A stretch of 64,000 nt of DNA from Tubulanus polymorphus. Lineage: Eukaryota > Animalia > Nemertea. This document shows, piece after piece, positions 2-17,800 of this stretch; position 1 is the first letter of the stretch; the number at the start of each line of letters is the position of its first letter. The translations under genes and the position numbers were made by a program. The stretch spans positions 4,258,778 through 4,322,777 of the forward strand of contig NC_134030.1 of the NCBI RefSeq assembly GCF_964204645.1, written 5' to 3'. Below the pieces are notes generated by a model. That model did no database searches, was not told where the DNA came from, and saw only the letters and a program-made list of their open reading frames with translations.

Positions 2-1936
2 ACCGACGATGCCCGTATCACGGGCTGCCTCCTGAGAGGCGATGATTTCTCTTCGCCTGACAGTCTCGCCGCTCTGGGGACTTATAAACATGTCATCGCA
101 CTTGTGCTAACGCATAATAAAATCAACTCGATGCACAAATGGCCTCTGGTCGGAGACCGCATGCGCCTGTTGCGCCTAGACGGCAATCTGTTCGATTACC
201 TGCCGCGTAACGCGTTCAAAGACGTGCCCAACTTATCCGTTTTGTCTTTATCGCATAATTCGATAGAATCTGTGCACCAGGATGCATACGTCGGTCTTAC
301 CAATCTGCGACATTTGAATATATCGTCTAATCGTCTGACATGCGTGAACGGAGCGGCTTTGCGCTCTTTGACTCAGTTAGAAGTCTTGGATCTGACCGGA
401 AACCTAATAAAAGACTTAGCCGGTGGCCAATTCCGCACTTTGGGTAAACTGACGCACATTTACTTAGGCGGCAACGATATTCATTATGTATACGAAGGTG
501 CATTTGCGGGGCTTCATCGGCTGGAGGTGCTCAATCTGGAGAAAAACCACATCAAGATCGTGCCGACCAGAGCCTTGCAGATATTCCAACTGTTGTCCGA
601 AATTCGATTGAGCGCTAATCATCTATCTCGCTTTCGCCCGGGTGCATTCGAACGGATAAACGTAACGAATTTATTCGTCGACAAGCTGGACGATTTGGTT
701 CTTGTTGACAAAGGTGCGTTCGTCAACATGCCGCATCTGCAGTCGTTAGCTTTACACGGCAATAAACGACTCGGTTACGTCGACGTCGATGCATTCAGCA
801 GGACTCCTAGATTGGAATCGCTGACTCTTCACGGCAACAATCTGAAAGCCATCGAATATAAAATGATCAGACATTTGCCGAATCTGAGTTTCATCAGTTT
901 TCACAGCAATCCGTTGCGTTGTGACTGCTCGATTTTCTGGATCGTCAACGATATTTTCAAGAAACGTCGCTTCACATTTTCACGTTTAGAAGATGCCGTT
1001 TGTTCGTCACCGAAAAGCGCCAAAGGCAGTTTGGTCTATCGACACAATCCACAATTCATTCAACGACAATGCAGCCCCACGATAGTCCCACTATTCGAAA
1101 AACGAATAAGCGTTTTAGTGGGCGACAACTTCACGATGGATTGCCGTGCTGTCGGTGTACCCAATGCCCAGTTGACCTGGATAGACCCGTCCGGCAAAGT
1201 ATATAGAAATATGACCCACTTCGAGAATAAAGCCGTTTCCCCTTCCGGGACATTGATGTTTGATCGCATACGCGCTAGCGATCAGGGTATCTATACTTGC
1301 GCCGCCGACAACGGGATAGGGGACGATAGACGAAGGGTTCTCGTTATCACGAACAAAATCCACGCTAGCCTACTGGTCCTCGGTATCCAGGCGACGTCTA
1401 TTACCGTCACGTGGAACGGTACAACGCCGTTGCTTAGTTACGTGATAATTGTAGAACGTGGGATGAAATCGGAGAAATCGCAACGAATTCACATCCGTCC
1501 TTATATGCGTGAATATACGCTCAGTAATTTGCTGCCGCTACACCAGTATCGAATCTGTATCGCCGTCCTTGAAAAGTCCGTAGCAGCGCGCTATCGTCGA
1601 TGCATTCAAATAACAACTAAATCTATCAGCTATCTTACATCGGGTGTGTTTAATTTCCGAAAATACGTTCTGGGCGGCGTGTTCGGGGTGCTGGTCGTGG
1701 CCGTTCTGGTCGTCATATCTGGATTTTTCGCCTATCGTAAATATCAAAGGAGGCAACGACTTCTGAAAGAACTGTACGGCGATAACTTGTCGCAGTTGTT
1801 TTTCTCGAGTGTCGACAGCTCGTCGGGAATGACCACGCCAGTGACGTACGAGAACGTCACCGCGCAGGCGTACCAAGACGAGGAGGAAGACAGCGCAGAC
1901 GACATAGCCAGCACGTCGAACTTACAGCTGTCCTGA
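2..1936 (+). CDS. LRR-Ig-FN3 single-pass membrane receptor (LRRN/NLRR-like), 5'-truncated by window edge
   Basis: Frame is open from position 2, so the ORF track start at 104 is arbitrary. About 10 LxxLxLxxN repeats, LRRCT cap (NPLRCDC...C...C), I-set Ig domain (DCRAVGVP...W...DQGIYTC), FN3 domain (SITVTW...YTLSNLLPLHQYRIC), TM helix (YVLGGVFGVLVVAVLVVISGFFAY) followed by RKYQRR and a short acidic tail. No introns in this part. Confidence 0.9.
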   Translation, partial: TDDARITGCLLRGDDFSSPDSLAALGTYKHVIALVLTHNKINSMHKWPLVGDRMRLLRLDGNLFDYLPRNAFKDVPNLSVLSLSHNSIESVHQDAYVGLTNLRHLNISSNRLTCVNGAALRSLTQLEVLDLTGNLIKDLAGGQFRTLGKLTHIYLGGNDIHYVYEGAFAGLHRLEVLNLEKNHIKIVPTRALQIFQLLSEIRLSANHLSRFRPGAFERINVTNLFVDKLDDLVLVDKGAFVNMPHLQSLALHGNKRLGYVDVDAFSRTPRLESLTLHGNNLKAIEYKMIRHLPNLSFISFHSNPLRCDCSIFWIVNDIFKKRRFTFSRLEDAVCSSPKSAKGSLVYRHNPQFIQRQCSPTIVPLFEKRISVLVGDNFTMDCRAVGVPNAQLTWIDPSGKVYRNMTHFENKAVSPSGTLMFDRIRASDQGIYTCAADNGIGDDRRRVLVITNKIHASLLVLGIQATSITVTWNGTTPLLSYVIIVERGMKSEKSQRIHIRPYMREYTLSNLLPLHQYRICIAVLEKSVAARYRRCIQITTKSISYLTSGVFNFRKYVLGGVFGVLVVAVLVVISGFFAYRKYQRRQRLLKELYGDNLSQLFFSSVDSSSGMTTPVTYENVTAQAYQDEEEDSADDIASTSNLQLS

Positions 1937-3643: not shown

Positions 3644-6600
3644 ATGGGTAATATCGTAAACGCGGTGAAAGTATTTCGCTCGCCGGTCGTCGTGACCGTG
3701 TGGACGGGTGAGCGCCCGAAGTCCGGTACCGACTGTGTGATCAGGCTGAAACTGTATGATCAGGCAGGTACAGCCCTACCTGAAGTGGAGCTCGATAACT
3801 TTTTGCTGGATGATTTTGAAAGAGGAAATGAAGATGAATTTGGTATACCAGCTGATTTTCCCGAATTCCTTGGAATCAGGTACGACTTATAGATAGCAGT
3901 TTGTTCATAATAATTGATGAAGTGAATTTAAGTCAAACAACGTGTTCAAACTCTTTATGAGTAAGATGATAATAATTAAAGTATTTAATGCCAAAAAGAG
4001 GCATCAGAACTGAAAGGACAAACTTAAAGAGGCACATGATAGACACTGAATATGAAGTCACTTGGGAGTCTTGATTTAATTTGACTCTCTGAGTTTAAAC
4101 ATTGAAAATGAAGTGATTTATCTCAATAGGTATCTCTCACACTGTGGAACATGACTTTATTTCACAGTTGTGAGTTAAACTCTGGTTAAAACAAGTTCAT
4201 TTTCAATGCGTTAACTTTGAGTCATTTTTCAATTCGCCGTGGAACCTAGATTCCCGGCACTAAGCGGCCATTTTCTTGCTTTGATTTATTGTGAGAATCT
4301 TACACTTCAGCAAAATGGAGATTTTCACTCGGGCCTCGGGTTTCGACCCTAAATGGTTCGCCAACAGAATCCAAATACACGACAAGAGAACGAGCAAGTT
4401 TTACGAGTTTCCTATTTTGCGTTGGATTCAACCGGATGTGACCTGGAATGTTTCGCTGTACGACACGTCACTTCCGGTCGCGGATAAAAATCCGGAGCAG
4501 CGCGCAAAGGAATTGGCGGAAAAGAAGGAATTGTATAAACTGACCGTCAAGGTTGAAGGTATGCCTGTCCAAATCGATACATTGACGGAGGACGAGTTTT
4601 TCGATGATAAAGCTAAGGTAAATATGATTTTGTTATCAATGAGAAATTGATAATGGTATGAAGGAAAAAGGGACGAAAAATGACTCTTCTAATGAATGTT
4701 TTCTAGGCGGCGTCAGCGTGGACTAAAGTCGGGGTGTTTGGTGAAAAGGCGGCAATGAAAGTGATGGCTAAAGATAGATGGGAAGATCTTCATCAACTGG
4801 CCGCTGTTTACAGAACGATTGGACTGGATGCACCAAAGGTAGCGAAGAATCAAGCTTAAAACATCCCAATCAACCATGTTTTTTTAGATTTCCATTTGCG
4901 CTATTGTTCAATTTATGCACTACCCTTGTATTTACACAGAGTTTAACAAACTGGAAAACTGATGAACACTTCGCCGCTCAACGACTGAGTAGTTGCAGCT
5001 CAAACTTATTAGCCCAATGCGCGAGCGGAATTCCAGCTAAGTATGTTATGATGCGAAGGCAACTGGCAGCGAAATGTGCACTGCCAGTTTTTGCCAGTGT
5101 CCATATAAACCGCGATCACACGGAGACGATTTGGCCCGGGTCAAACTGGTCCGAGAGTGGGTTCACACACATCACTACTAACCAATGTTGTGGCAGGCTG
5201 TGTTGTCTGACGTTTTCGGTTGGGCCAAATTTGGTATCAGCGAGAACGGATGTGGCCCGGGTCAAAAATGCTCTTGGGGCGATCGCGGTTATATTTCAAT
5301 GCACGTCAAATATATACACGCAGACGAACAAAATACATATAAACGACCATTTTTTTCAAGTTTCCCGGTAACTGAAGATATGGTGAAACCGCTACTCGAC
5401 GGCGAAACATTGGAAGACATCAAAACACAGAACCGCTTGTTTATCGTTGATTTGAAGATTCTCGAAGATATTAAGTGTCCAGACGATAGACCAGTTAGTA
5501 ATCAGTTTCCTTTGGCTTTCGGTAATGTATTGTTAATGTGCAAGGGATCACAAATTGGTCATTGCCGGAACCCGGTACAATTAAGCTGGTACCCATTATA
5601 TCAAGACCAGCAGATACTTGCCGAAATAAATAGACATGGCCGGTTTATAGGGTTTTATTTTAATGTGTGTATGTAGGGGCGGGTACATATTGCTTGTCGG
5701 AATAAAAGGTAAAACGTTATGTATAACTTTTCTTACTATTTGTTATTGCAGCTATGCGCTCCCATGGCACTTTTCTTCCTGAATAAATCCAAAGTTTTGA
5801 TGCCGCTTGCGATCCAGCTGTACCAGAAAGAAGGGGATGATAACCCCGTAAGACGGCTTCAATTTCACCTTGCAAAAAATGCTTTCAATTCTTAATTTCA
5901 ATTTGATTACGAAAAACTCTTAGGCACAAAGCTTCATGCAATATTGACAAGCAAACATGAAACTCATTGATAACTAATTAGATTTAATTGTTGGTTTATG
6001 GACATATGGATATATATTCAATCTTTTAGATATTTTTGCCGACTGATGACCCATACGTGTGGCTTTTGGCGAAAATGTGGTTTAATAACGCCGATTGCGC
6101 TTATCACCAAGCACTGTCGAATATCTGTAATTATCGATGAGTCTATGAAAGATGAGAATATGTCGTTACATTGATAATAAAACGGATCGGTCATAACTAA
6201 CTGATTTTCCAGTTAATTCTAATGTAAATGGATATTACTTATCACAACTTATATTTTTTCACAGGTTTCACCCATCTTGCGATGGAAAGCGTCGCGTTGT
6301 GTACAAATCGTAATATATCACCGTCGCATCCGATATATAAACTACTGGCTCCACATATCCATAACCTTCCTATTGTCAATGGGTTAGTATTCAACGGTTC
6401 GCGTAATGGCTTGTTCATTTTTTGGCAGGATCCAAGTCGCTGCGCTGCAAAAAGAACGTTTACTTTCTCTAAGAATAAGATTTCCAATGATTTGAAGAAA
6501 CCATCCAAATATTATTGTTTTAGTAATTCAAAGTCTACTGTTGCCTGCACATGTTGAATCTTAATGAATCTAAACTTTGACGATTGATATTAGCCAGCCG

Positions 6601-8473
6601 GTCATTCGACTATGTCAATATGGTTCCATGGTGTAGTGGTTATCACATCCGCTTTACACGCGGAAGGCCTCGGGTTCGAGCCCCGATGGAACCTTGTTTT
6701 TACAGCTATTTTTTCTAACATATTCCATAGTTTCTTTTCTTTTTATTTCATTTCAGCTTGACACGAAGCAAGTTAATGGCGGCTGGTGGCTGGATTGACA
6801 AGACGATGACCATTGGCCGAGAGGGAGCGCAACAGCTTATCATAAAAGCGTAAGTGAGGGGGTACTCAACCATCATATCTCAAAAAATGATGTTGCCCTG
6901 CCAGTTTCATAGTCAGGTTATTATTCTATTTTGATAGTTGGAAGGAATGGCGAATTGACGCAGATGGAATTCTGATGAATTCTCTCACATTCAAAGGTGT
7001 AAGTAACATCGTATGGTAGGTCCAGGTAGAACGTCATTCCCGTACAAGATGAATATGTAGAAAATCCCACAATAGGTCAAGAAAAAAGATATATTGTCTT
7101 ATATCTAAATCTTCTGATAGAACATTTCGTCTTTTTGTTTGGACTAATTGTGAGATTTTCTTCACAGCGGTGTTTGATTCATCTCTTCCGTTGATACATA
7201 ATCATCAATCACACAAAACTTTTCCGTGCTCAGTAACGCAATGATTATATCTCTATTTTCTACAGGTGGAAAGTGAATCAGTTTTACCTGATTATCACTA
7301 TCGAGATGACGCGGTTCTGATATTTGACCTCATCAAGGTCTATGTCGAAGAGATCGTTAACCATTATTACAGTAAGCATCGATATCTATCCAATACGTCG
7401 CATCAGATTTTCAACTTTCGATTCTCTTGGAATTAGAATACATAAGTGTTATATGCAAACCTGATGAATCTCTTCTGTATTGCAAAAGAAACGGATGATG
7501 CTGTAGTTGCGGACCACGAACTACAGGCCTGGGGAGCAGAACTTGCAGCACCTCACGCCGACGGAGCAGGATGTGGCATTCAGGTACGTTGCAGCAAATT
7601 GTGTGGCCCATAAATGACGCTATCTTTCAGAACTTATCGCTGATCTTTGTTTATAAAATGAGCCTGAATTGTTTCTAAACGTTTTTGTTTAAAATGAATT
7701 ATCATCATTTGCTAAATTCATTTAGAAAACGTCGCACATCACAATATTATTTCCAGCAGATTCAGTGTCAGGCAAGGAGTTTCTGGCCTGCCAAATTAAT
7801 TGAAGTTTAAGCGAGTAACAAAGATTCTGTTGATTCTATATATCTTTCTAGGGCGTTCCCGGCGATGGTAAGTTTGAAAAGAAGAGCGACCTCGTACAAT
7901 TGTTGAATACTATTGTGTATATCTGTTCCGCTGGATACGCGGCCGCTAATTATGCCCAGTACGAGACGTACGCTTTCCCGCCCAACTATCCAACGATTCT
8001 CAATGGAAAACCACCTTCAGATAAGGTAGGTAGATTGATCGATGCGCCATCGGCCTTACTGTTATAGATACTAAATCTCGTCGTAAAATACTGGACGTTT
8101 CTTTAAACAGAAAGCGTTGACCGAAAGAGCAATAGTTGATGCGATCCCGTCGATAGAGCAGTCGTTAGACGTGATGGTAGTGACGCAATTGTTGAGCAAA
8201 CGAGTCTCGAAAGCACTCGGTGACTTCGATGTGCTATACATCTACGAACCAGAAGCGCTGAAAATCGTTCAAAAGTGAGTAAAACACCCCGATACATTTC
8301 TATGAAATCGACTTAGATCTCAACAATTCTGAACGCCTTTTGTGTTTATCCATCGCAGGTTCAAAGATGGTCTGAAGAAAGTAAGTGTTGCGCTAAAAGA
8401 ACGTAATGCCAAGCGGGCCAGGCCTCACGTGATATTGGATCCGGTTGACATACCGAACTACATCAATCTTTAA
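3644..8473 (+). CDS. PLAT + lipoxygenase-domain protein (ALOX/AOS-LOX-like), 15 exons, ~675 aa, probably catalytically inactive
   Basis: Phase-consistent GT-AG exons: 3644-3879, 4311-4617, 4707-4838, 4940-5040, 5361-5493, 5752-5847, 6030-6126, 6265-6382, 6757-6849, 6938-6998, 7266-7371, 7489-7583, 7852-8025, 8111-8274, 8359-8473 (2028 nt). PLAT motifs VTVWTGERPKSGTD, DDFERG, FPILRW. LOX motifs WKTDEHFAAQRL, LMPLAIQL, WLLAKMWFNNAD, THLAME, HPIYKLLAPH, YHYRDD, ELQAW, C-terminal DIPNYINL*. Confidence 0.9.
6622..6694 (+). tRNA. tRNA-Val-TAC: tRNA-Val (anticodon TAC), inside intron 8 of the lipoxygenase gene
   Basis: Cloverleaf: acceptor GGTTCCA/TGGAACC, A-box TGGTGTAGTGG, anticodon arm TCCGC-TTTACAC-GCGGA, T-arm TCGGG-TTCGAGC-CCCGA; Pol III terminator TTTTT at 6697-6701. 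Confidence 0.93.
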
Positions 8474-10409
8474 AAAACCCTCCCTTGCAACTAAAACTAT
8501 TAACAAATCGCAATATGCAACGAATATATACATTATTTCCGAGTCAAAAACAACATGATATATATATATTCGACTTGAAGATTTAATATCGTTTTTCTCA
8601 TACATAGGAAATACGTATGTTAAATTACTTAGAAACCAATGATATATTCGATAACCAGTTTGTATTCATCGAACGATTACCAATTTTTTTTTCAATTTAC
8701 GCAGTTCTAATTCACTAGAGAACATTCTGTTGTTGATCTTAAAATAGGGATTGTCCCCATTATTTATTTATTTGGCTGATAAATTTTGTTTGATTTTTCG
8801 ATTGAGTGTCCCTTACAGACCCACCACACCTGCCGGGAGCGAAACAGGGGGAACATTCTGTTGTTACATGTATAGGCTTGCTCCCACGATGAAAAAATTC
8901 CAAATGATAAGAGATTTTTTATTAGAGATAGGACATCTGTTTATTCTTGGTCGATAATGTAAATGTAGATTGATATCGTCAGGAGAACTCGTCACTATCT
9001 TTGGAAAAAATGTATATACCCATGTAAAGACTCTTCCGTTCAAAATGGCTACCCGTATATACACTGGCTTGTGCCACGTGTTTTGATGTGTGTTGGGATC
9101 TAGGTTTGATTTTTAACGTCTGTCATATCATTATTCCATGCGGCCAATCACTACTTTTGTACCCAAGATTACATTTCACTTTGTCGTCTTTCTAGGTCAA
9201 CGTATAAAATGCATAAGGCTTATTCTATTCTCACGAATAGTATTTAGTATTAATCGAAAACTATATATTATTGAATTCTTTATTAGTTTTAGCATTACAT
9301 CTGATTTTCTTCAAACGAGTGCGGTTTAAATAGATTAACGGTTATCAATAGTTATTATTGACGTAAAAGCGTGTTGTGATACTGAAGTATGAAATGCATA
9401 TATATTGTGAAATAAAATGTTCTTCTTGGTTGAATTTATCTTTATGTATCTTACATCTTGGATCAACCATTAACCACTCCATTTGGAGCATCAATCTGCT
9501 CGCCATTTGTTTCCCCGAAGATAGCATAAAATGCTGGTTTTTGCGATCGATCCGAATCCGTTTCGAAAAAGGTACGTAACCATATAAAGACAGAGCTCTG
9601 TGAATATATCCATTGTATTTAAAATCTATATTAAAACATTGTATCTAAAATCTATATTGACACATTGTGTTTAAAATCTATATTGAAATTTATATATCCA
9701 TATGCATGAAGTTAAAAATATTAATGATCAAAATTATAAATATTAACAAAATAATCAACGAGTTCTTTACGTTCAAATGTAAGCAGTACCAGAATCTATT
9801 TACTACACGGTCGTAACACGCAACGAAATATACATTACTTTCACAGAGTGCTATTATAGACAGGCCCAAAACTATTGAAATGAAAAATCTAAAATATCAT
9901 ATCTCACTCCCATCTTTTGGAATTACTGTAAGACCATTATTTCATTTCTAAATATATTTAAACTATACATACGTGTAAATACATGATTAATTCTAATGTA
10001 ATCCATCAAAATCATGCGATATAATGCATAATGTCCTGTAATTTACAGAATGTGTATGAATGTGCGTTTATAGGCTACTGGACGTTTGAGGCTAAAAATC
10101 ATCTTTTAACTTCACCAGATGTGCTCAGCGTTTTGTTCACAAATCCAAAGATTACGAATGAGACGAATGAAATATTATACAGTTCGGAAATATAACTGTC
10201 GGTGTAATTCATTGTACAGTAAACGTCACCTTACTCAGGCATGATGCTATATCCGCACTTTCGACTAACTCGGACAAAAACGATGGCACTTTTTAATTTC
10301 CAACATTATGTTTCTGACCCTTAAACGCAATCGTTGCCTTTGGGCCTTTTTGCAAAATCCTTTCGTTTTCTTTGTCAGAGGCTCGGTTTAGTGTAAAATG
10401 AAATATGAT

Positions 10410-11306
10410 TTAGTTTGACGAAAGCAGTATGTCGGTCTCCGAATCGCTTTCACCTGGCTGTGGCGCCAACAAAGCGCGTTTAAACTCGCGACGATCATTC
10501 ATATTTTCTAAGTCGATTTCTTCGATATTCGTCTCGCGTCTGTAGCCAAGAATTCTACAATAGAAAACATTCACAATCGCTCCAATCGTGAATATAACTA
10601 TCAAAATTATCAACGCATGCCAGCCGAACATGATTGTCGTGATCATTAAGTGCTCGTGGTCTTCGCTGGACCATCTTTCGCCACTTCTCCTCGGGTTGTA
10701 GAGGATGAAAGCTACCTGCCAAAACCAGGTACCTTGTAGCAGGACGAAAAATGCACTAGTTAGTCCGGCGAGGACGTTATTAGGGAATCGCATCTGGACA
10801 AGTATGGCTAGGGCACTGCAGAATATGGCGTATAGCAGTAGCGTGTGTATTTGAATATCGATAGCATTTCGACCGAAAAGGTGGAACTTGAACAAGAGTC
10901 CTTCGACTGTAAAAGCCAACGCCAAGGCAATGTAATCACTATTCTTCGGCACGAATCTCACTTTGTGATGCAGCAAGATATCCACGATACCGCTGACGAT
11001 AAAAGGGGCATACATCGTGGAATGTTGTTTGTTTCCAATATACACAACGAACCTTCCTCCTTGCATGTAGCTATTGGTCACTTCACCGAATATTCCGATG
11101 CTCGCCACTAGAATCTTTATGACGCCTTCGATTTGGTACCTTTTGAAACATCCACAAAGACATGCTAGCGGATACGTGGCGGAATTGCGGTATGTCGAGC
11201 TTTCGTATTTTGATTTAAAGTATCGAATCCATATTTGTATTGTCCAGTGTAGCGCGAACACTAAGAAAAAACTTCCCGGCAAAACGTGACCCTGGAAGGA
11301 TCCCAT
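10410..11306 (-). CDS. TMEM45B: Transmembrane protein 45B-like (DUF716 family), 298 aa, single coding exon
   Basis: Starts MGSFQGHVLPGSFF; family motifs QHSTMY, VEGLLFKFH, IHTLLL, LQGTWFWQVAFILY, WH; several TM segments. ATG at 11306 lies just after a TTTAG acceptor, so the ORF-track extension to 11378 is probably intronic. Confidence 0.9.
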   Translation of the reverse strand: MGSFQGHVLPGSFFLVFALHWTIQIWIRYFKSKYESSTYRNSATYPLACLCGCFKRYQIEGVIKILVASIGIFGEVTNSYMQGGRFVVYIGNKQHSTMYAPFIVSGIVDILLHHKVRFVPKNSDYIALALAFTVEGLLFKFHLFGRNAIDIQIHTLLLYAIFCSALAILVQMRFPNNVLAGLTSAFFVLLQGTWFWQVAFILYNPRRSGERWSSEDHEHLMITTIMFGWHALIILIVIFTIGAIVNVFYCRILGYRRETNIEEIDLENMNDRREFKRALLAPQPGESDSETDILLSSN

Positions 11307-13631
11307 CCTAAATTCCTTTAAAATGTGACACTTGCCATTACTAATCCTAAACCTAAAATGTATAGAGAAAGAATTCATGTGTATTTATATTTGAAAACAT
11401 TAGGCCACGTAGTCTGGTGAGTTTCTAGCTCGAAAATCATGGGGTTCGACGCATTCCCCAACACAGCGAGCTCAACGAGCAAAAAATCTGCACAACGCCC
11501 AAGCAAAGCTACATGTGTAATATGATTGGTTGACCCTGTGTCTAAAGTATACGTAGTATGATGAGAGTAATGAGAACGTGTCCTACTGATGAGATTCGGT
11601 ATATAATCCTCTCCGCTTCTAAAACACCACTTACGTAATGCCAACTAAGCTTAAAGCTTGGAACGATTACCAGTACCTGTACTGTCTAGACAGTGCGCAT
11701 TTAAACGCCGCAGGTACGGAACTGTACAAAGGCAGGTTTAAATACCATGTAGTTCGTATAGATCTAATACGTAGCGTGCATATCCGCAGCGCTATAGATA
11801 GATCATTAAACTACAGCGCAATGCACTATGTCACGTGTGCTTTTTTATTGCTTTTGTGACAATTTCAATGGATCTCAAAATAGGGACGCGTTCATGGTGT
11901 AGAGGTTCGTGGAGATGGTGCTGTGAACCAGTATTTATGTTGGCCTACGCAGCGGACCTGTGGATGTCGTTTTAATCGTGCTTAGTTCGTTGGACTCTAT
12001 CTTCGTGCGAGCGATAATTCATGATCATTATGACAAAGTTGTTGTCGCATAGTCGTTTCTGATATTGAAGACAACCGGGACAGGCAGGAAGGAGTGAACC
12101 ACCTCACAGTAACTTCCCGCTATAGATCATTCGGATTTAACACGTTACTTGATTTCCGATTTCAAAATCAAACCCCCTGTTTCGTTCCCGGCAGGTGTGG
12201 TTTGGTTTGTAAGGGACACAGCATCAAAAATAATCAATCTATCCAATTAAATAACAGGGTCAATCACTATGAAGTCGGATCGGCCAAAGTCGAATGTCGC
12301 TTATATCGGATGGATAGTGATGGTCCCGATTTTTCCCTCCCTTTTTCGAAGTATACATTTTAAAGTCGGGTTTCATCTCGTACCATTTTTCTTGGCCCCA
12401 AAATAAAAAATCAGTTAAGATCACTCAGTCGCAGGGCAATTTTCATCACATTGCAGTTTGATTTCTTCCCTTTCCGTCCCCTGTTCTCTGGTTTTAAATC
12501 GATGAAAAATGTCACGTCAACAGTCGTTATTTCAGATTCGGTAAGTGTATTAGACTAGAAAAATAAACCCGAAATATTTCAGTGTTTTAAAATCATTACT
12601 CGAAGATGTTGATTTAATTTTTCCGTTTACAGAAATTAATTCTCGAGTCTAATACGTATCCACTTCTCGCCGTCGAGCTCTTTCACTGAGAATGAAGATG
12701 AAATTACCAAAATATATTTTTGTATTTATAAAAAGACAACTTTATTTTCAAATAGTACATTTCCAGCCGGCGAACATCGATCAGCGACCGACCCCAATGG
12801 GGCACCCGCAAAAACTTATTATCCCGCCAGATGGCGTGACGAGCGATAGGTGGTTCGTTGTCTAAATAATGTCCGCGTCATTTTCAATGAACTTTGAACT
12901 GGGTTTTAGACTCCCCAATCCATATCATCACAGCACCCACCAAATATACAATACTTTCATCCTTCTACTCAGATATCGGATAGTCTTCTTGAATGATTGA
13001 TTCATTTAAAAGAAAAGATTTTTAATTGAAGAAATTGCACGCGGACGACCAACTATCTACTAGCTTAACCCGGCGCATCCTCGCCTGCCATACGTGGAAT
13101 CCTCGTTTTGCCACAGTAACACTACGGGTACCCAATTCTGACTCGGTGTATCGATACACAGGTTTACAAAAAAATACATGCACACAATATCTTATATAAT
13201 CGTGTCTTCATTATATGGTCACTTCAAATTATTACAATTTTCTTTTAAATGCGGAATAATGCATATACTAGTACACAACTGATCCGAGTTTCTAAAAGTT
13301 GGTGTCATCACAATAAGGCATTGAACATGTTGAAAAGGCTGTATAGGCCCTATACATGACTCCTGCATCCTATACGGTACCTGATCTACTACGGCGTGAG
13401 TCAGGAACACGATTAGGCGCGAAATCTGATTACTCGTTTTTTTCTGAATGAATAGTAATGAAAGAAGACAGAGGTATTTCATGAAGTGTACAAAACGCTA
13501 GATCGATTTTCATTTTCAATGAGCGTTTTTAAATAAGGAAAAGTGACCGAATAAAACGGGTGAAAGGAAATCGCCTTGTTTTAGGATCCATGCATGGATA
13601 GAATTCCGAAGTGCAGTCGTTTAAACAGTTA

Positions 13632-14830: not shown

Positions 14831-17800
14831 TCAAGAAGAGCGTTTCTGTAACAGTAGCTGTCGCAACGAATTCGCCTCCTCTCGGAGAGTTGCCACCTGA
14901 GCTCGTAAAATGGCGTTCTCTTTCTCCAAAAAGCTGGCGCGAATAGCGATTTCATCCTCACGCGCCTTTCGATGATCTCGAGATTTTTTTGCCGCTAGAT
15001 TATTGCGTAAGCGTCGCTCGTAGTAACGACCATCTTTTTCGTTATCGGGAATCGGTTTCTTCGAGCAGCGCGGACGCTTCTGACCAGACGAGATGGATCG
15101 GCCAATCGTCGCCGAACCGTAGCCACCTGCAATTAGAGATACATATATTATTTGATATGTAATCCCGCCAACAAGTACACCTGAAAATAGCATAATCTTC
15201 TGTTCTAACCACTCATAGACCACTCTACAGAGTTGCCCTTGACAATAAACTATGGATACATATCTAATATGAATTCATTTTCTAAAAATCCGGCATACTA
15301 AATGCGATGCGATGCACCATTTACGCGTGGGCGCATTAAACATCGATATAGAATGGTATAATGTTTAAACCAGTTGTAAACCATAGATTCGTCCGGTGTG
15401 CTGTATACAATAAAGGGCTGCTCTTTTTCCAGCAATGACGCAGGTTTGATAACTTTGACCTTAATAAACTAGAAAAACATTGCAACGCATAACATAACAG
15501 AAAATAGCGACCGCAAATTTAATAGCAGTCGATAAAACCGATTCTAACTAAATTACAACTTTCTGAAGATTTCTGAACGAGCGTGGTCTGTCCGTTCGAA
15601 TATTACAAAGACGGCGAGATATCGATGAAGAATATGGCTGCGGCGGCGGCGGCGGGCACACGCGACAGATGAAACGACAGACGTCAGAAAATAACGGTCA
15701 AACAATGAGAAAATACAACTAGTTACACGCGAGTAAATAATCAGTCAGCTTGACCAGTGGCTAGTCTCTTTGTTCGACGTGGTAACTGACCACTCGATGA
15801 CCAATTCGAAGCTATTCGGATAATAAATCTGGTTTACAATCTCTTCTGGCACTCGCTTAATCTTCCGCCATTTCTTTATTTGATCTCAAATTGTCCATCT
15901 GTGATGCTAAGCCGTCCATTCTTCCGTGACATGAGACGCTCGCCGTTCATTATCATACGTTTAACCGAAGTCGCCCGTTTATTAAACACTACTCGAGGCA
16001 TGCAGGGAGGTGCCGCCCTTGCATCCCGCTGTAGGGTATCGTTGTCTGTGTAAATAGGCCTATATAATCGTATACAATCAAATAACCGTGTTTCAAAAAT
16101 GATCGGTGTTTGTGTATGTTTAACGAATATTTCTATTTTGAAAGGAGTCAAATTAGCTGTAGGAAATAATGATCATTGAAGGGAACATTATTCCGCTCAA
16201 ATCAATTTTTTGACAACTTAGTCGGATATTTGAGTGGAAAATCCCTATATCGAGAATGGGCACCCTTTAAAATCATTCCTTCACCTTTATAGAAGTATTT
16301 TCCAGCTAAAGGTTAAAATGACACGTTATCTATATTATATACGTACTTGCATTTTTATCGCACGGTAAAACATGAAATAAATAGTTTCATCTGATTCAAC
16401 AAATATGTTTATTCTAGGGTAATCGGATCGCTGCCCATGACGTGTACAGTTTACGCAACTGTTCGGCTTCGATTTTTCTGCAACCAACAGAAGATTAAAC
16501 ACGTTGGTGAACGCTGGCAAACCAACAATTCTATTGAAAAACAGATGCTTCGCTATATGGGAATTTTCAACTCCGAGGAAAAAAGACTAATGGACATTGT
16601 TCATCTGGTCCGTAGAATTCGATAATTCCGAACTCGTATTTATTTAAAACGGTTGATACAGTTTTTGATGATAACTCGAGGCAATGCGGCATCAGCCACG
16701 CGTCTTTTCTCTTGATTCCAATCGAAGAAACTATTTAAAGACTCGGCAGCGAATGATTATGTTTTTCTGACATTGTTTCCATGAATATCAATGTTGAATG
16801 CGCATTGTTCATTTATCGGATTATAACATCGACCGCCGCTGCCCGCTGATGACCAGTCAGTCAGCAGCCCATAAAGAAAACAAAGAACAGAAGACTCACT
16901 TCAGACTGAACTTGCAAGCTGCGTTCGCTCACCACTATAGCAAGACTGTTCTACGAGCTGAGATGATTGCTCGTAGGGCTGTTCTAAACGGGTCCGTACC
17001 AGGAACGTGCCAAATCAGTGTCCGTTCACACACGCGCGTTAAGATACCTAGCAACGACTGGCACCACAAGATGTCGCCATGAGTATTTCACCCCAGAATT
17101 TATATCTAAACGATAGATTTATACGAGTCCCTGGCTGTTATTTATCTTTAAAATTTTGATGATCGCAGCTTATATCTGGACACATCAATTTGGTGAATTG
17201 CATGATATTTCCAAAGCAATAAGAGCAGATACTTCATGCGAGCGAAACACGTGCAATAAACAGATTTTAAATCAATAATAATTTAACACGTGCAAAGGGT
17301 CCGTTTCCAGAATTTGTAGAAGAGTATTTTAAAGAAATATTTTGAAGTATTCAGAAGTATTTTGCGTCGGTTCAAGTTGGCTCGGTCTAAAATGGAATGG
17401 TGCAATTTGGATCGGACGTTTTGCAAATTGGAACTGGCCAAATTTAGACTGGTCTAAATAACGTCGTGCGAACGCGCCGACAATTTCACGAGAAATTGAT
17501 AAACTACGTTTACACCCTATAATATTTACTCATACAAAAACAAATAACTATAAAGAATATCATATTCAATTCATTCAATCGTTAGAACGGCGTCACTTAA
17601 CATAATTCCACCAATTTACGATCGAATAAGAAAATGTTATTTTCTCCTTAATTTCCCCAAACAACCAACCATCAGTCGGCTTCACGCCTTAGTCAGTGAC
17701 ACGCTGTGCGTAAAAAAAGAGCTTCGAATTTTCAAAAGCCTGTTTTAAAAATGCTTTTTTATGTAACAGTTGAAATATAAGCATATATGTATATATATAT

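What the first reader, a model, noticed from the sequence alone, without database searches (positions are those of the whole stretch)
3644..8473. Intact lipoxygenase gene that has lost its iron site: candidate pseudo-lipoxygenase
Seen: the 15-exon frame is uninterrupted (~675 aa, PLAT+LOX), yet the metal ligands are replaced. HQALSNICFTHLAME aligns to human 5-LOX H362-QTIT-H367-LLRT-H372, so H367 is Asn (AAT 6120-6122). CSAGYAAAN aligns to SAQH550AAVN554, so H550 is Tyr (TAC 7936-7938). The C-terminal Ile is Leu (8468-8470). The Coffa-Brash Ala/Gly stereo-determinant is Thr (ACA 6761-6763), and the GxNP motif reads SCSS. Only the H372 (6273-6275) and N554 (7948-7950) equivalents remain. Established: these His residues coordinate the catalytic non-heme Fe and their mutants are inactive. 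Inference: several active-site changes with no stop, frameshift or broken splice site suggest a retained non-catalytic function (lipid carrier/sensor, dominant-negative partner, structural protein) rather than decay. The MGN start may be myristoylated, keeping membrane targeting.
Basis: partly seen in the sequence, partly recalled or inferred. Interest (0 to 1): 0.85.

Follow-up and report, generated by a model that had tools for sequence, protein, structure and literature searches.

The report
Ribbon-worm lipoxygenase lacking iron-binding histidines
A ribbon worm keeps an intact, selection-maintained copy of a fat-oxidising enzyme gene that has lost two of the three histidines needed to hold its catalytic iron, so it probably makes a non-enzymatic, possibly lipid-binding protein; similar disarmed copies arose separately in other invertebrates, but expression and function are untested.

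Summary
Window 3644-8473 is a 15-exon, all GT-AG, 675-codon PLAT+lipoxygenase gene of the nemertean Tubulanus polymorphus (RefSeq XP_074652900.1). Its His367 and His550 equivalents are Asn366 and Tyr554, and the Coffa site is Thr. Sequencing contigs, including a second haplotype, show the same codons. Every genome paralog read at these sites keeps the histidines. The gene does not look like a decaying pseudogene. The haplotypes differ at 6 synonymous and 2 nonsynonymous sites (pN/pS about 0.11), indels lie only in introns, and branch dN/dS is about 0.04-0.1. Changes cluster at the metal and pocket segments (10/22 versus 20/141 conserved columns, p=0.0015). The predicted fold is intact. Best reading: a constrained pseudo-lipoxygenase, most likely a membrane- or lipid-binding protein. 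Histidine-deficient, full-length lipoxygenases also occur in lancelets, mites/ticks, a crinoid and a flatworm; a single origin is rejected (p-AU 0.004). No RNA evidence and no ortholog were found.

The parts
3644..8473 (+). 15-exon PLAT+lipoxygenase gene, 675 aa (T. polymorphus, RefSeq XP_074652900.1)
3644..3879 (+). Exon 1: Met-Gly start and first half of the PLAT domain, with the acidic DDFE motif kept
4311..4617 (+). Exon 2: rest of the PLAT domain and start of the catalytic domain. RefSeq uses a weaker acceptor at 4367/4368 and omits 19 conserved residues. An intron present in the C10 paralog is absent here
4991..5002 (+). SCSS in place of GxNP; only Asn to Ser (residue 245) is exceptional in the family
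6120..6122 (+). Asn366 (AAT) at the first iron-ligand His (5-LOX H367); followed by Leu to Ile 367 and Gly to Cys 368
6273..6275 (+). His371, retained ligand (5-LOX H372)
6761..6763 (+). Thr409 at the Coffa-Brash Ala/Gly site (Ala 37, Gly 24, Thr 0 of 61 references); nearby Pro403, Ile404 and Val405 also depart
7936..7938 (+). Tyr554 (TAC) at the third iron-ligand His (5-LOX H550)
7948..7950 (+). Asn558, retained ligand (5-LOX N554); next residue Phe to Tyr 559
8468..8473 (+). C-terminal Leu675 and stop, in register with the family's terminal Ile (carboxylate ligand position kept)

Best explanation
This is a lineage-specific duplicate of the nemertean PLAT-lipoxygenase family that has become a pseudoenzyme. 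Shown: the gene is intact and under purifying selection; the metal-site and substrate-pocket segments were selectively altered while the rest of the fold was conserved. Following from established LOX chemistry: without H367 and H550 it cannot form the Fe(III)-OH centre that abstracts hydrogen from polyunsaturated fatty acids, so it is not a dioxygenase. Inferred: it most likely works as a peripheral membrane, lipid-binding protein. The PLAT domain (acidic DDFE motif and invariant Trp117 kept) would dock on membranes. A remodelled hydrophobic cavity (Gln362, Leu413, Gln561, Leu611 kept; Ile367, Cys368, Ile404, Thr409, Tyr554 changed) would hold a fatty acid or oxylipin without oxidising it, buffering substrate or competing with the active paralogs of the same genome. 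The confidence figure is for constrained pseudoenzyme; lipid binding as the specific job is about 0.45 overall.
For: Intact frame and splice sites. Same codons in read contigs, one of them largely the second haplotype. 6 synonymous to 2 nonsynonymous haplotype differences against 28 intronic SNPs and 6 intronic indels: P = 0.003-0.007 for the S:N split, Fisher p = 0.0004 against the neutral rate. Branch omega 0.044, with lnL 0.9 lower at 0.1 and 4.5 lower at 0.2; omega = 1 is 17 lnL units worse. 76 of 84 near-invariant columns kept against 34 of 137 variable ones. Departures cluster in the iron-helix, arched-helix and C-terminal segments, 10/22 against 20/141, p = 0.0015, while two intact paralogs show 1/22. 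Under neutral decay a second ligand would be hit before any stop, splice or frameshift lesion only 1-6% of the time. AlphaFold model pLDDT 92.7, TM 0.87-0.89 to 15-LOX-2, coral 8R-LOX and 5-LOX. H367N, H372N and H550N mutants of Alox5 lack activity, and Alox5 is reported to have activity-independent roles (PMC9672960). Independent histidine-deficient LOX in other invertebrates.
Against: No RNA run holds the gene; the one presumed RNA run of the species laid nothing on it, with no control gene laid. The polymorphism test rests on 8 sites, probably two haplotypes of one animal, read from bubble-collapsed contigs. dS on the branch is saturated (about 3-7), so omega averages over time before and after ligand loss. 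No ortholog above 48% identity exists in the databases. The model is built on an alignment of active LOX, so it leans to their fold. No binding data exist; bulkier pocket residues could close the cavity.
Confidence: 0.72

Rival explanations
1. The protein still binds a metal through a changed ligand set (Asn366, His371, Tyr554 phenolate, Asn558, C-terminal carboxylate) and has another chemistry, such as hydroperoxide isomerase or peroxidase activity, or metal holding.
For: Three of five ligand positions and the second-shell Gln362 and Gln561 are kept. Both replacements can in principle ligate metal; PMC3840004 notes that Tyr may act as an iron ligand. Constraint on the whole protein fits an enzyme too.
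Against: H367N alone abolishes Alox5 activity (PMC9672960). From own knowledge, a tyrosinate ligand stabilises Fe(III) and lowers its potential, which disfavours redox cycling; ALOXE3 isomerases keep all three His (P0268-P0271 rows). Ten of 22 conserved site columns changed, as in the lancelet copies that lost every ligand.
Confidence: 0.13
2. It is a young pseudogene or a duplicate in the first stage of decay that has not yet taken a stop or frameshift.
For: Both His changes are single-base steps (CAT to AAT, CAC to TAC; sequence). The terminal branch is about 1.6 times longer than its sisters' (0.71 against 0.42-0.46). No RNA evidence. RefSeq's model has a 19-residue hole in the PLAT domain.
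Against: pN/pS 0.10-0.13, and no coding indel against 6 intronic ones. At the neutral divergence needed to explain the excess changes (about 0.035 per site), the chance of no stop, no splice loss and no frameshift is about 1e-3 or less (0.068 x 0.141 x 0.094 at most). Neutral change would not cluster at the active site.
Confidence: 0.1
3. It is an ordinary active lipoxygenase, and the odd codons are assembly errors or a private allele.
For: Logan contigs collapse heterozygous sites, so a His allele at one codon cannot be strictly excluded.
Against: Contigs of three runs from two samples read the same codons. X1's long contig carries 8 of the 9 alternate alleles seen in X2, so it is mostly the other haplotype. 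Ten separate site changes are spread over five exons.
Confidence: 0.03

Closest known systems
Intact T. polymorphus LOX paralogs (XP_074658773.1 = P0166 on C10; XP_074651881.1 = P0006 on C5; copies on C6 and C19)
   Same: Same PLAT+LOX layout and nearly the same exon lengths; 46-48% identity; sister group with SH-aLRT 96-100.
   Different: They keep His-His-His-Asn-Ile and Ala/Gly at the Coffa site wherever read; the query lacks two His and one intron.
Coral 8R-LOX (Plexaura AOS-LOX, PDB 2FNQ/3FG1), coral 11R-LOX (3VF1), human 15-LOX-2 (4NRE) and 5-LOX (3O8Y)
   Same: Same fold, TM 0.86-0.89, about 29% identity; ligand positions align without gaps.
   Different: These are iron dioxygenases with all three His. 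The query has no catalase-like AOS domain despite its RefSeq name.
Engineered inactive Alox5 H367N / H372N / H550N mutants (PMC9672960)
   Same: The identical His367 to Asn change, and a reported activity-independent role of the protein.
   Different: Laboratory single mutants of a mammalian enzyme; the query is a natural paralog with two ligand changes and about ten site changes.
ALOXE3 hydroperoxide isomerase
   Same: A LOX-fold protein that has shifted away from dioxygenase activity (own knowledge).
   Different: It keeps its iron and all His ligands, so it is an enzyme; the query is not its ortholog.
Unstudied histidine-deficient LOX-like proteins: Branchiostoma (XP_019638280.1, XP_078593775.1), Tropilaelaps OQR69394.1, Ornithodoros XP_064482113.1, Anneissia XP_033111083.1, Macrostomum PAA89542.1
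   Same: Near full-length, one to three His ligands lost, and (except Anneissia, p 0.10) changes concentrated in the site segments.
   Different: Separate origins (single clade rejected, p-AU 0.004) and different replacement residues. The lancelet copies lose all ligands yet are shared between species at 79.5% identity. These are database gene models; I did not check their DNA or reads.

Membership tests
Lipoxygenase family (PF00305) by descent and fold | Profile match over the curated cut-off | tested here: met
   209.7 bits against a cut-off of 23.6
Lipoxygenase family (PF00305) by descent and fold | N-terminal PLAT domain plus helical catalytic domain | tested here: met
   PF01477 31.5 bits; model TM 0.87-0.89 to animal LOX structures
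Catalytically active lipoxygenase | Three invariant His iron ligands (5-LOX H367, H372, H550) | tested here: not met
   Asn366, His371, Tyr554
Catalytically active lipoxygenase | Fourth ligand (Asn/His/Ser) and C-terminal carboxylate in register | tested here: met
   Asn558; the chain ends at Leu675 in register
Catalytically active lipoxygenase | Small residue (Ala/Gly, at times Ser) at the Coffa-Brash site | tested here: not met
   Thr409; 0 of 61 references. Exceptions to the rule exist, e.g. zebrafish LOX1 (PMC6612559)
Catalytically active lipoxygenase | Bound Fe or Mn and PUFA dioxygenation | not testable with these tools
   Needs recombinant protein
AOS-LOX fusion protein (RefSeq name) | Catalase-like allene oxide synthase domain | tested here: not met
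   Only PLAT and lipoxygenase domains in 656-675 aa
Pseudoenzyme (general class) | Enzyme fold with essential catalytic residues replaced | tested here: met
Pseudoenzyme (general class) | Maintained by purifying selection | tested here: met
   pN/pS 0.10-0.13; branch omega about 0.04-0.1; small sample
Pseudoenzyme (general class) | Expressed as mRNA and protein | tested here: inconclusive
   No run on record as RNA holds it; X4 laid nothing and had no control
Pseudoenzyme (general class) | Measured lack of activity and a demonstrated non-catalytic role | not testable with these tools
   Bench work
Pseudogene | Disabling lesions or neutral evolution | tested here: not met
   No stop, frameshift or broken splice site; neutrality rejected

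The most novel reading that the evidence does not exclude
Metal-free lipoxygenase paralogs are a recurring, so far unrecognised class of invertebrate pseudoenzymes. They arose several times (nemertean, lancelets, mites/ticks, crinoid, flatworm) and are kept as lipid carriers or as regulators of their active siblings; this gene is one expressed example.
Probability: 0.45. Interest if true: 0.75.

Novelty: new variant of a known kind. Interest (0 to 1): 0.57.

Why it matters
The three iron histidines are described as invariable across the lipoxygenase family (PMC3840004), and intact ligand clusters are used to define true LOX genes (PMC6612559). Activity-independent roles of mammalian LOX are reported from engineered mutants (PMC9672960). 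A natural LOX that lost the site but stays under selection would show that such a role can keep the gene on its own, and gives a protein on which to find it. It also warns that invertebrate LOX counts based on annotation include probable non-enzymes. Pseudoenzymes as such are well known, so this is a new family example, not a new principle. I found no paper describing natural ligand-deficient LOX paralogs, but the library searched is partial.

Tried and rejected
(1) Orthologs: a full-length search, a catalytic-domain search, an exon-2 search of 50% representatives and the ESM Atlas gave nothing above 48% identity, so cross-species dN/dS could not be done. (2) Expression: no RNA holder; the single read-laying run showed only unspliced contigs. 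(3) Loss of the PLAT-catalytic cation-pi bridge known from 11R-LOX: rejected as a special feature, because the basic residue is not conserved in this invertebrate clade and P0166 also has Glu there. (4) Myristoylation as a special trait: rejected. (5) C-terminal Leu as ligand loss: rejected. (6) RefSeq's shorter exon 2: less likely, since its acceptor scores 0.3 against 5.2 bits, the 19 residues are conserved in paralogs, and the model's lowest confidence falls at the gap, residues 76-78; RNA is needed to settle it. (7) Papers: five searches for inactive or ligand-deficient LOX, or nemertean LOX found no description; three primary mutagenesis papers were not held. (8) The careful bootstrap tree did not finish, so trees are quick IQ-TREE with SH-aLRT only. 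(10) The omega = 1 fit drove other branches to their bounds, so the profile values (0.05-0.5) are the ones to trust. (11) As the operators asked, the joined 675-aa model was never sent to a search tool.
Full report
Observation. The sequence at 3644-8473 gives a clean 15-exon model: all 14 introns are GT-AG, the coding length is 2028 nt, and there are 675 codons with no internal stop. A search with exon 2 returned P0001, which is RefSeq XP_074652900.1 of the ribbon worm Tubulanus polymorphus. It is identical to my model except for 19 residues missing at the start of exon 2. The joined 675-aa model was built only inside scripts for local alignments and trees, and no search was run with it.

Not an assembly error. 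Contigs of three public runs cover the two key codons without a different letter. X1's 3377-base contig (5350-8726) has 30 differences from the assembly, all listed, and none falls at 6120-6122, 6761-6763, 7936-7938 or 8468-8470. It carries 8 of the 9 alternate alleles seen in X2, so it is mostly the second haplotype, probably of the same animal. These contigs collapse heterozygous sites, so this is strong but not absolute evidence of homozygosity. None of the covering runs shows splicing. The one presumed RNA run of the species (X4) laid nothing, and I could not lay a control gene, so expression is untested.

Family context. The genome holds about ten LOX loci. The paralogs read at these sites keep the histidines. 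The query is sister to the C10/C19 paralogs (SH-aLRT 96-100) on a branch about 1.6 times longer than theirs. No protein outside the genome exceeds 48% identity, so it is a lineage-restricted duplicate as far as the databases go. It has only PLAT and lipoxygenase domains. An AlphaFold model of P0001 is confident (pLDDT 92.7, pTM 0.93) and matches 15-LOX-2, coral 8R-LOX and 5-LOX at TM 0.87-0.89. The model rests on an alignment of active enzymes, so it shows compatibility with the fold and no more.

Selection. Four lines argue against decay. (1) The two haplotypes differ at 6 synonymous and 2 nonsynonymous sites in 2028 coding bases, against 28 SNPs and 6 indels in 2802 intronic bases. pN/pS is 0.10-0.13, P = 0.003-0.007 for the split, and Fisher p = 0.0004 against the neutral rate, or 0.0009 with the intron-4 repeat left out. 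(2) A codon model on the query and three paralogs (651 codons) gives omega 0.044 on the query branch; lnL falls by 0.9 at 0.1 and 4.5 at 0.2. dS is saturated, so this is a long-term average. (3) The query keeps 76 of 84 near-invariant columns but only 34 of 137 variable ones. (4) Its departures at columns conserved in at least 85% of 61 intact references cluster in the iron-helix, arched-helix and C-terminal segments: 10 of 22 against 20 of 141 elsewhere, p = 0.0015, while two intact paralogs show 1 of 22. Under neutral decay a second ligand would be hit before any disabling lesion only 1-6% of the time. Together these show relaxed or redirected selection at the active site with constraint elsewhere.

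Mechanism. From established chemistry, LOX catalysis needs a non-heme iron held by three His, an Asn/His/Ser and the C-terminal carboxylate (PMC3840004). H367N, H372N and H550N mutants of Alox5 lack activity (PMC9672960). The query carries the H367N change itself, plus H550Y. It also has Leu to Ile 367, Gly to Cys 368, Ala to Ile 404, Ile to Val 405, Thr at the Coffa site and Phe to Tyr 559. Dioxygenase activity is therefore very unlikely; this is inferred, not measured. I commit to a membrane-docking, lipid-holding pseudoenzyme that may buffer fatty acids or oxylipins or temper the active paralogs. I put the constrained pseudoenzyme at about 0.72 and lipid binding specifically at about 0.45. 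The main rival (0.13) is a changed metal site, since His371, Asn558 and the C-terminus remain and Asn and Tyr can ligate metal. A young pseudogene gets 0.10 and an artefact 0.03.

The C-terminal Leu does not remove a ligand: the Ile676Val variant of ALOX15B is active, and some fish LOX end in Leu. In GxNP only the Asn is near-invariant (97%); intact mollusc enzymes vary at G and P. Gly2 is common in the clade (42 of 61), and the query has Asn at position 6 where its sister paralog has Ser, so myristoylation is uncertain. RefSeq's acceptor at 4367/4368 would delete 19 conserved PLAT residues; the upstream acceptor scores better (5.2 against 0.3 bits), but only RNA can decide.

Wider pattern. 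The same alignment shows other near full-length LOX-like proteins without one to three histidines: Branchiostoma (Asn, Arg, Arg, Ser), Tropilaelaps, Ornithodoros, Anneissia and Macrostomum. The B. belcheri and B. floridae-hybrid copies share the losses at 79.5% identity. Most of these proteins show the same site-focused change. They fall in separate parts of the tree, and a single clade is rejected (p-AU 0.004, quick tree, LG+G4). They are unverified database models, but the lancelet case suggests long retention. My paper searches found no description of such natural paralogs; the library lacks most subscription journals. Earlier notes of this scan held only an unrelated PLAT-receptor locus.

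Verdict. The feature is real. It is a lipoxygenase by descent and fold, fails the test for an active lipoxygenase, and passes the sequence tests for a pseudoenzyme. It is a new variant of a known kind. Interest is 0.57: surprising for LOX specialists and directly testable, but expression, an ortholog and a function are all still missing.

Noticed in passing
window 6622-6694 (+): A tRNA-Val(TAC) gene lies inside intron 8 of the LOX gene, on the same strand.
   Followed up: no
window 4087-4221 and 5108-5290: Two short elements with terminal inverted repeats (MITE-like) in introns 1 and 4, each with at least 40 related copies in the genome and very high read depth; a further high-depth repeat starts near 8733.
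   Followed up: partly
window about 4570-4580, exon 2: The intron that follows the PVQ motif in the C10 paralog is absent here with no shift of frame: a precise intron loss here or a gain in the sisters.
   Followed up: partly
window 4311-4367: RefSeq XP_074652900.1 omits these 57 bases (19 conserved PLAT residues); probably a mis-called acceptor, possibly a real alternative one.
   Followed up: partly
window 104-1936 (+), 10410-11378 (-), 14831-15223 (-): Neighbouring genes: an LRR-Ig-FN3 protein, a DUF716 protein and a bZIP factor. No other LOX gene was found in the window.
   Followed up: no
P0289, P0290, P0232, P0251 (Branchiostoma); locus L036: A lancelet LOX-like lineage lacks all iron ligands and has an eroded PLAT domain, yet is shared across species at about 80% identity: the best case for cross-species dN/dS.
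   Followed up: partly
P0103 (Tropilaelaps) and P0136 (Ornithodoros): A mite/tick LOX clade has lost the first His (Trp or Ser), and in Tropilaelaps also the third.
   Followed up: partly
G000:C6:17.82 Mb, 19.01 Mb, 17.44 Mb and C19: Near-identical recent LOX duplicates. No match to the earlier exons was found in the fetched 20 kb for the 17.44 Mb copy (exons 1-12) or the 17.82 Mb copy (exons 1-7), so they may be partial.
   Followed up: no
L004/L006, G000:C6:955986-956714: An exon-poor LOX copy of a different type, with a weak match after the middle of the catalytic domain; its third His was not checked.
   Followed up: no
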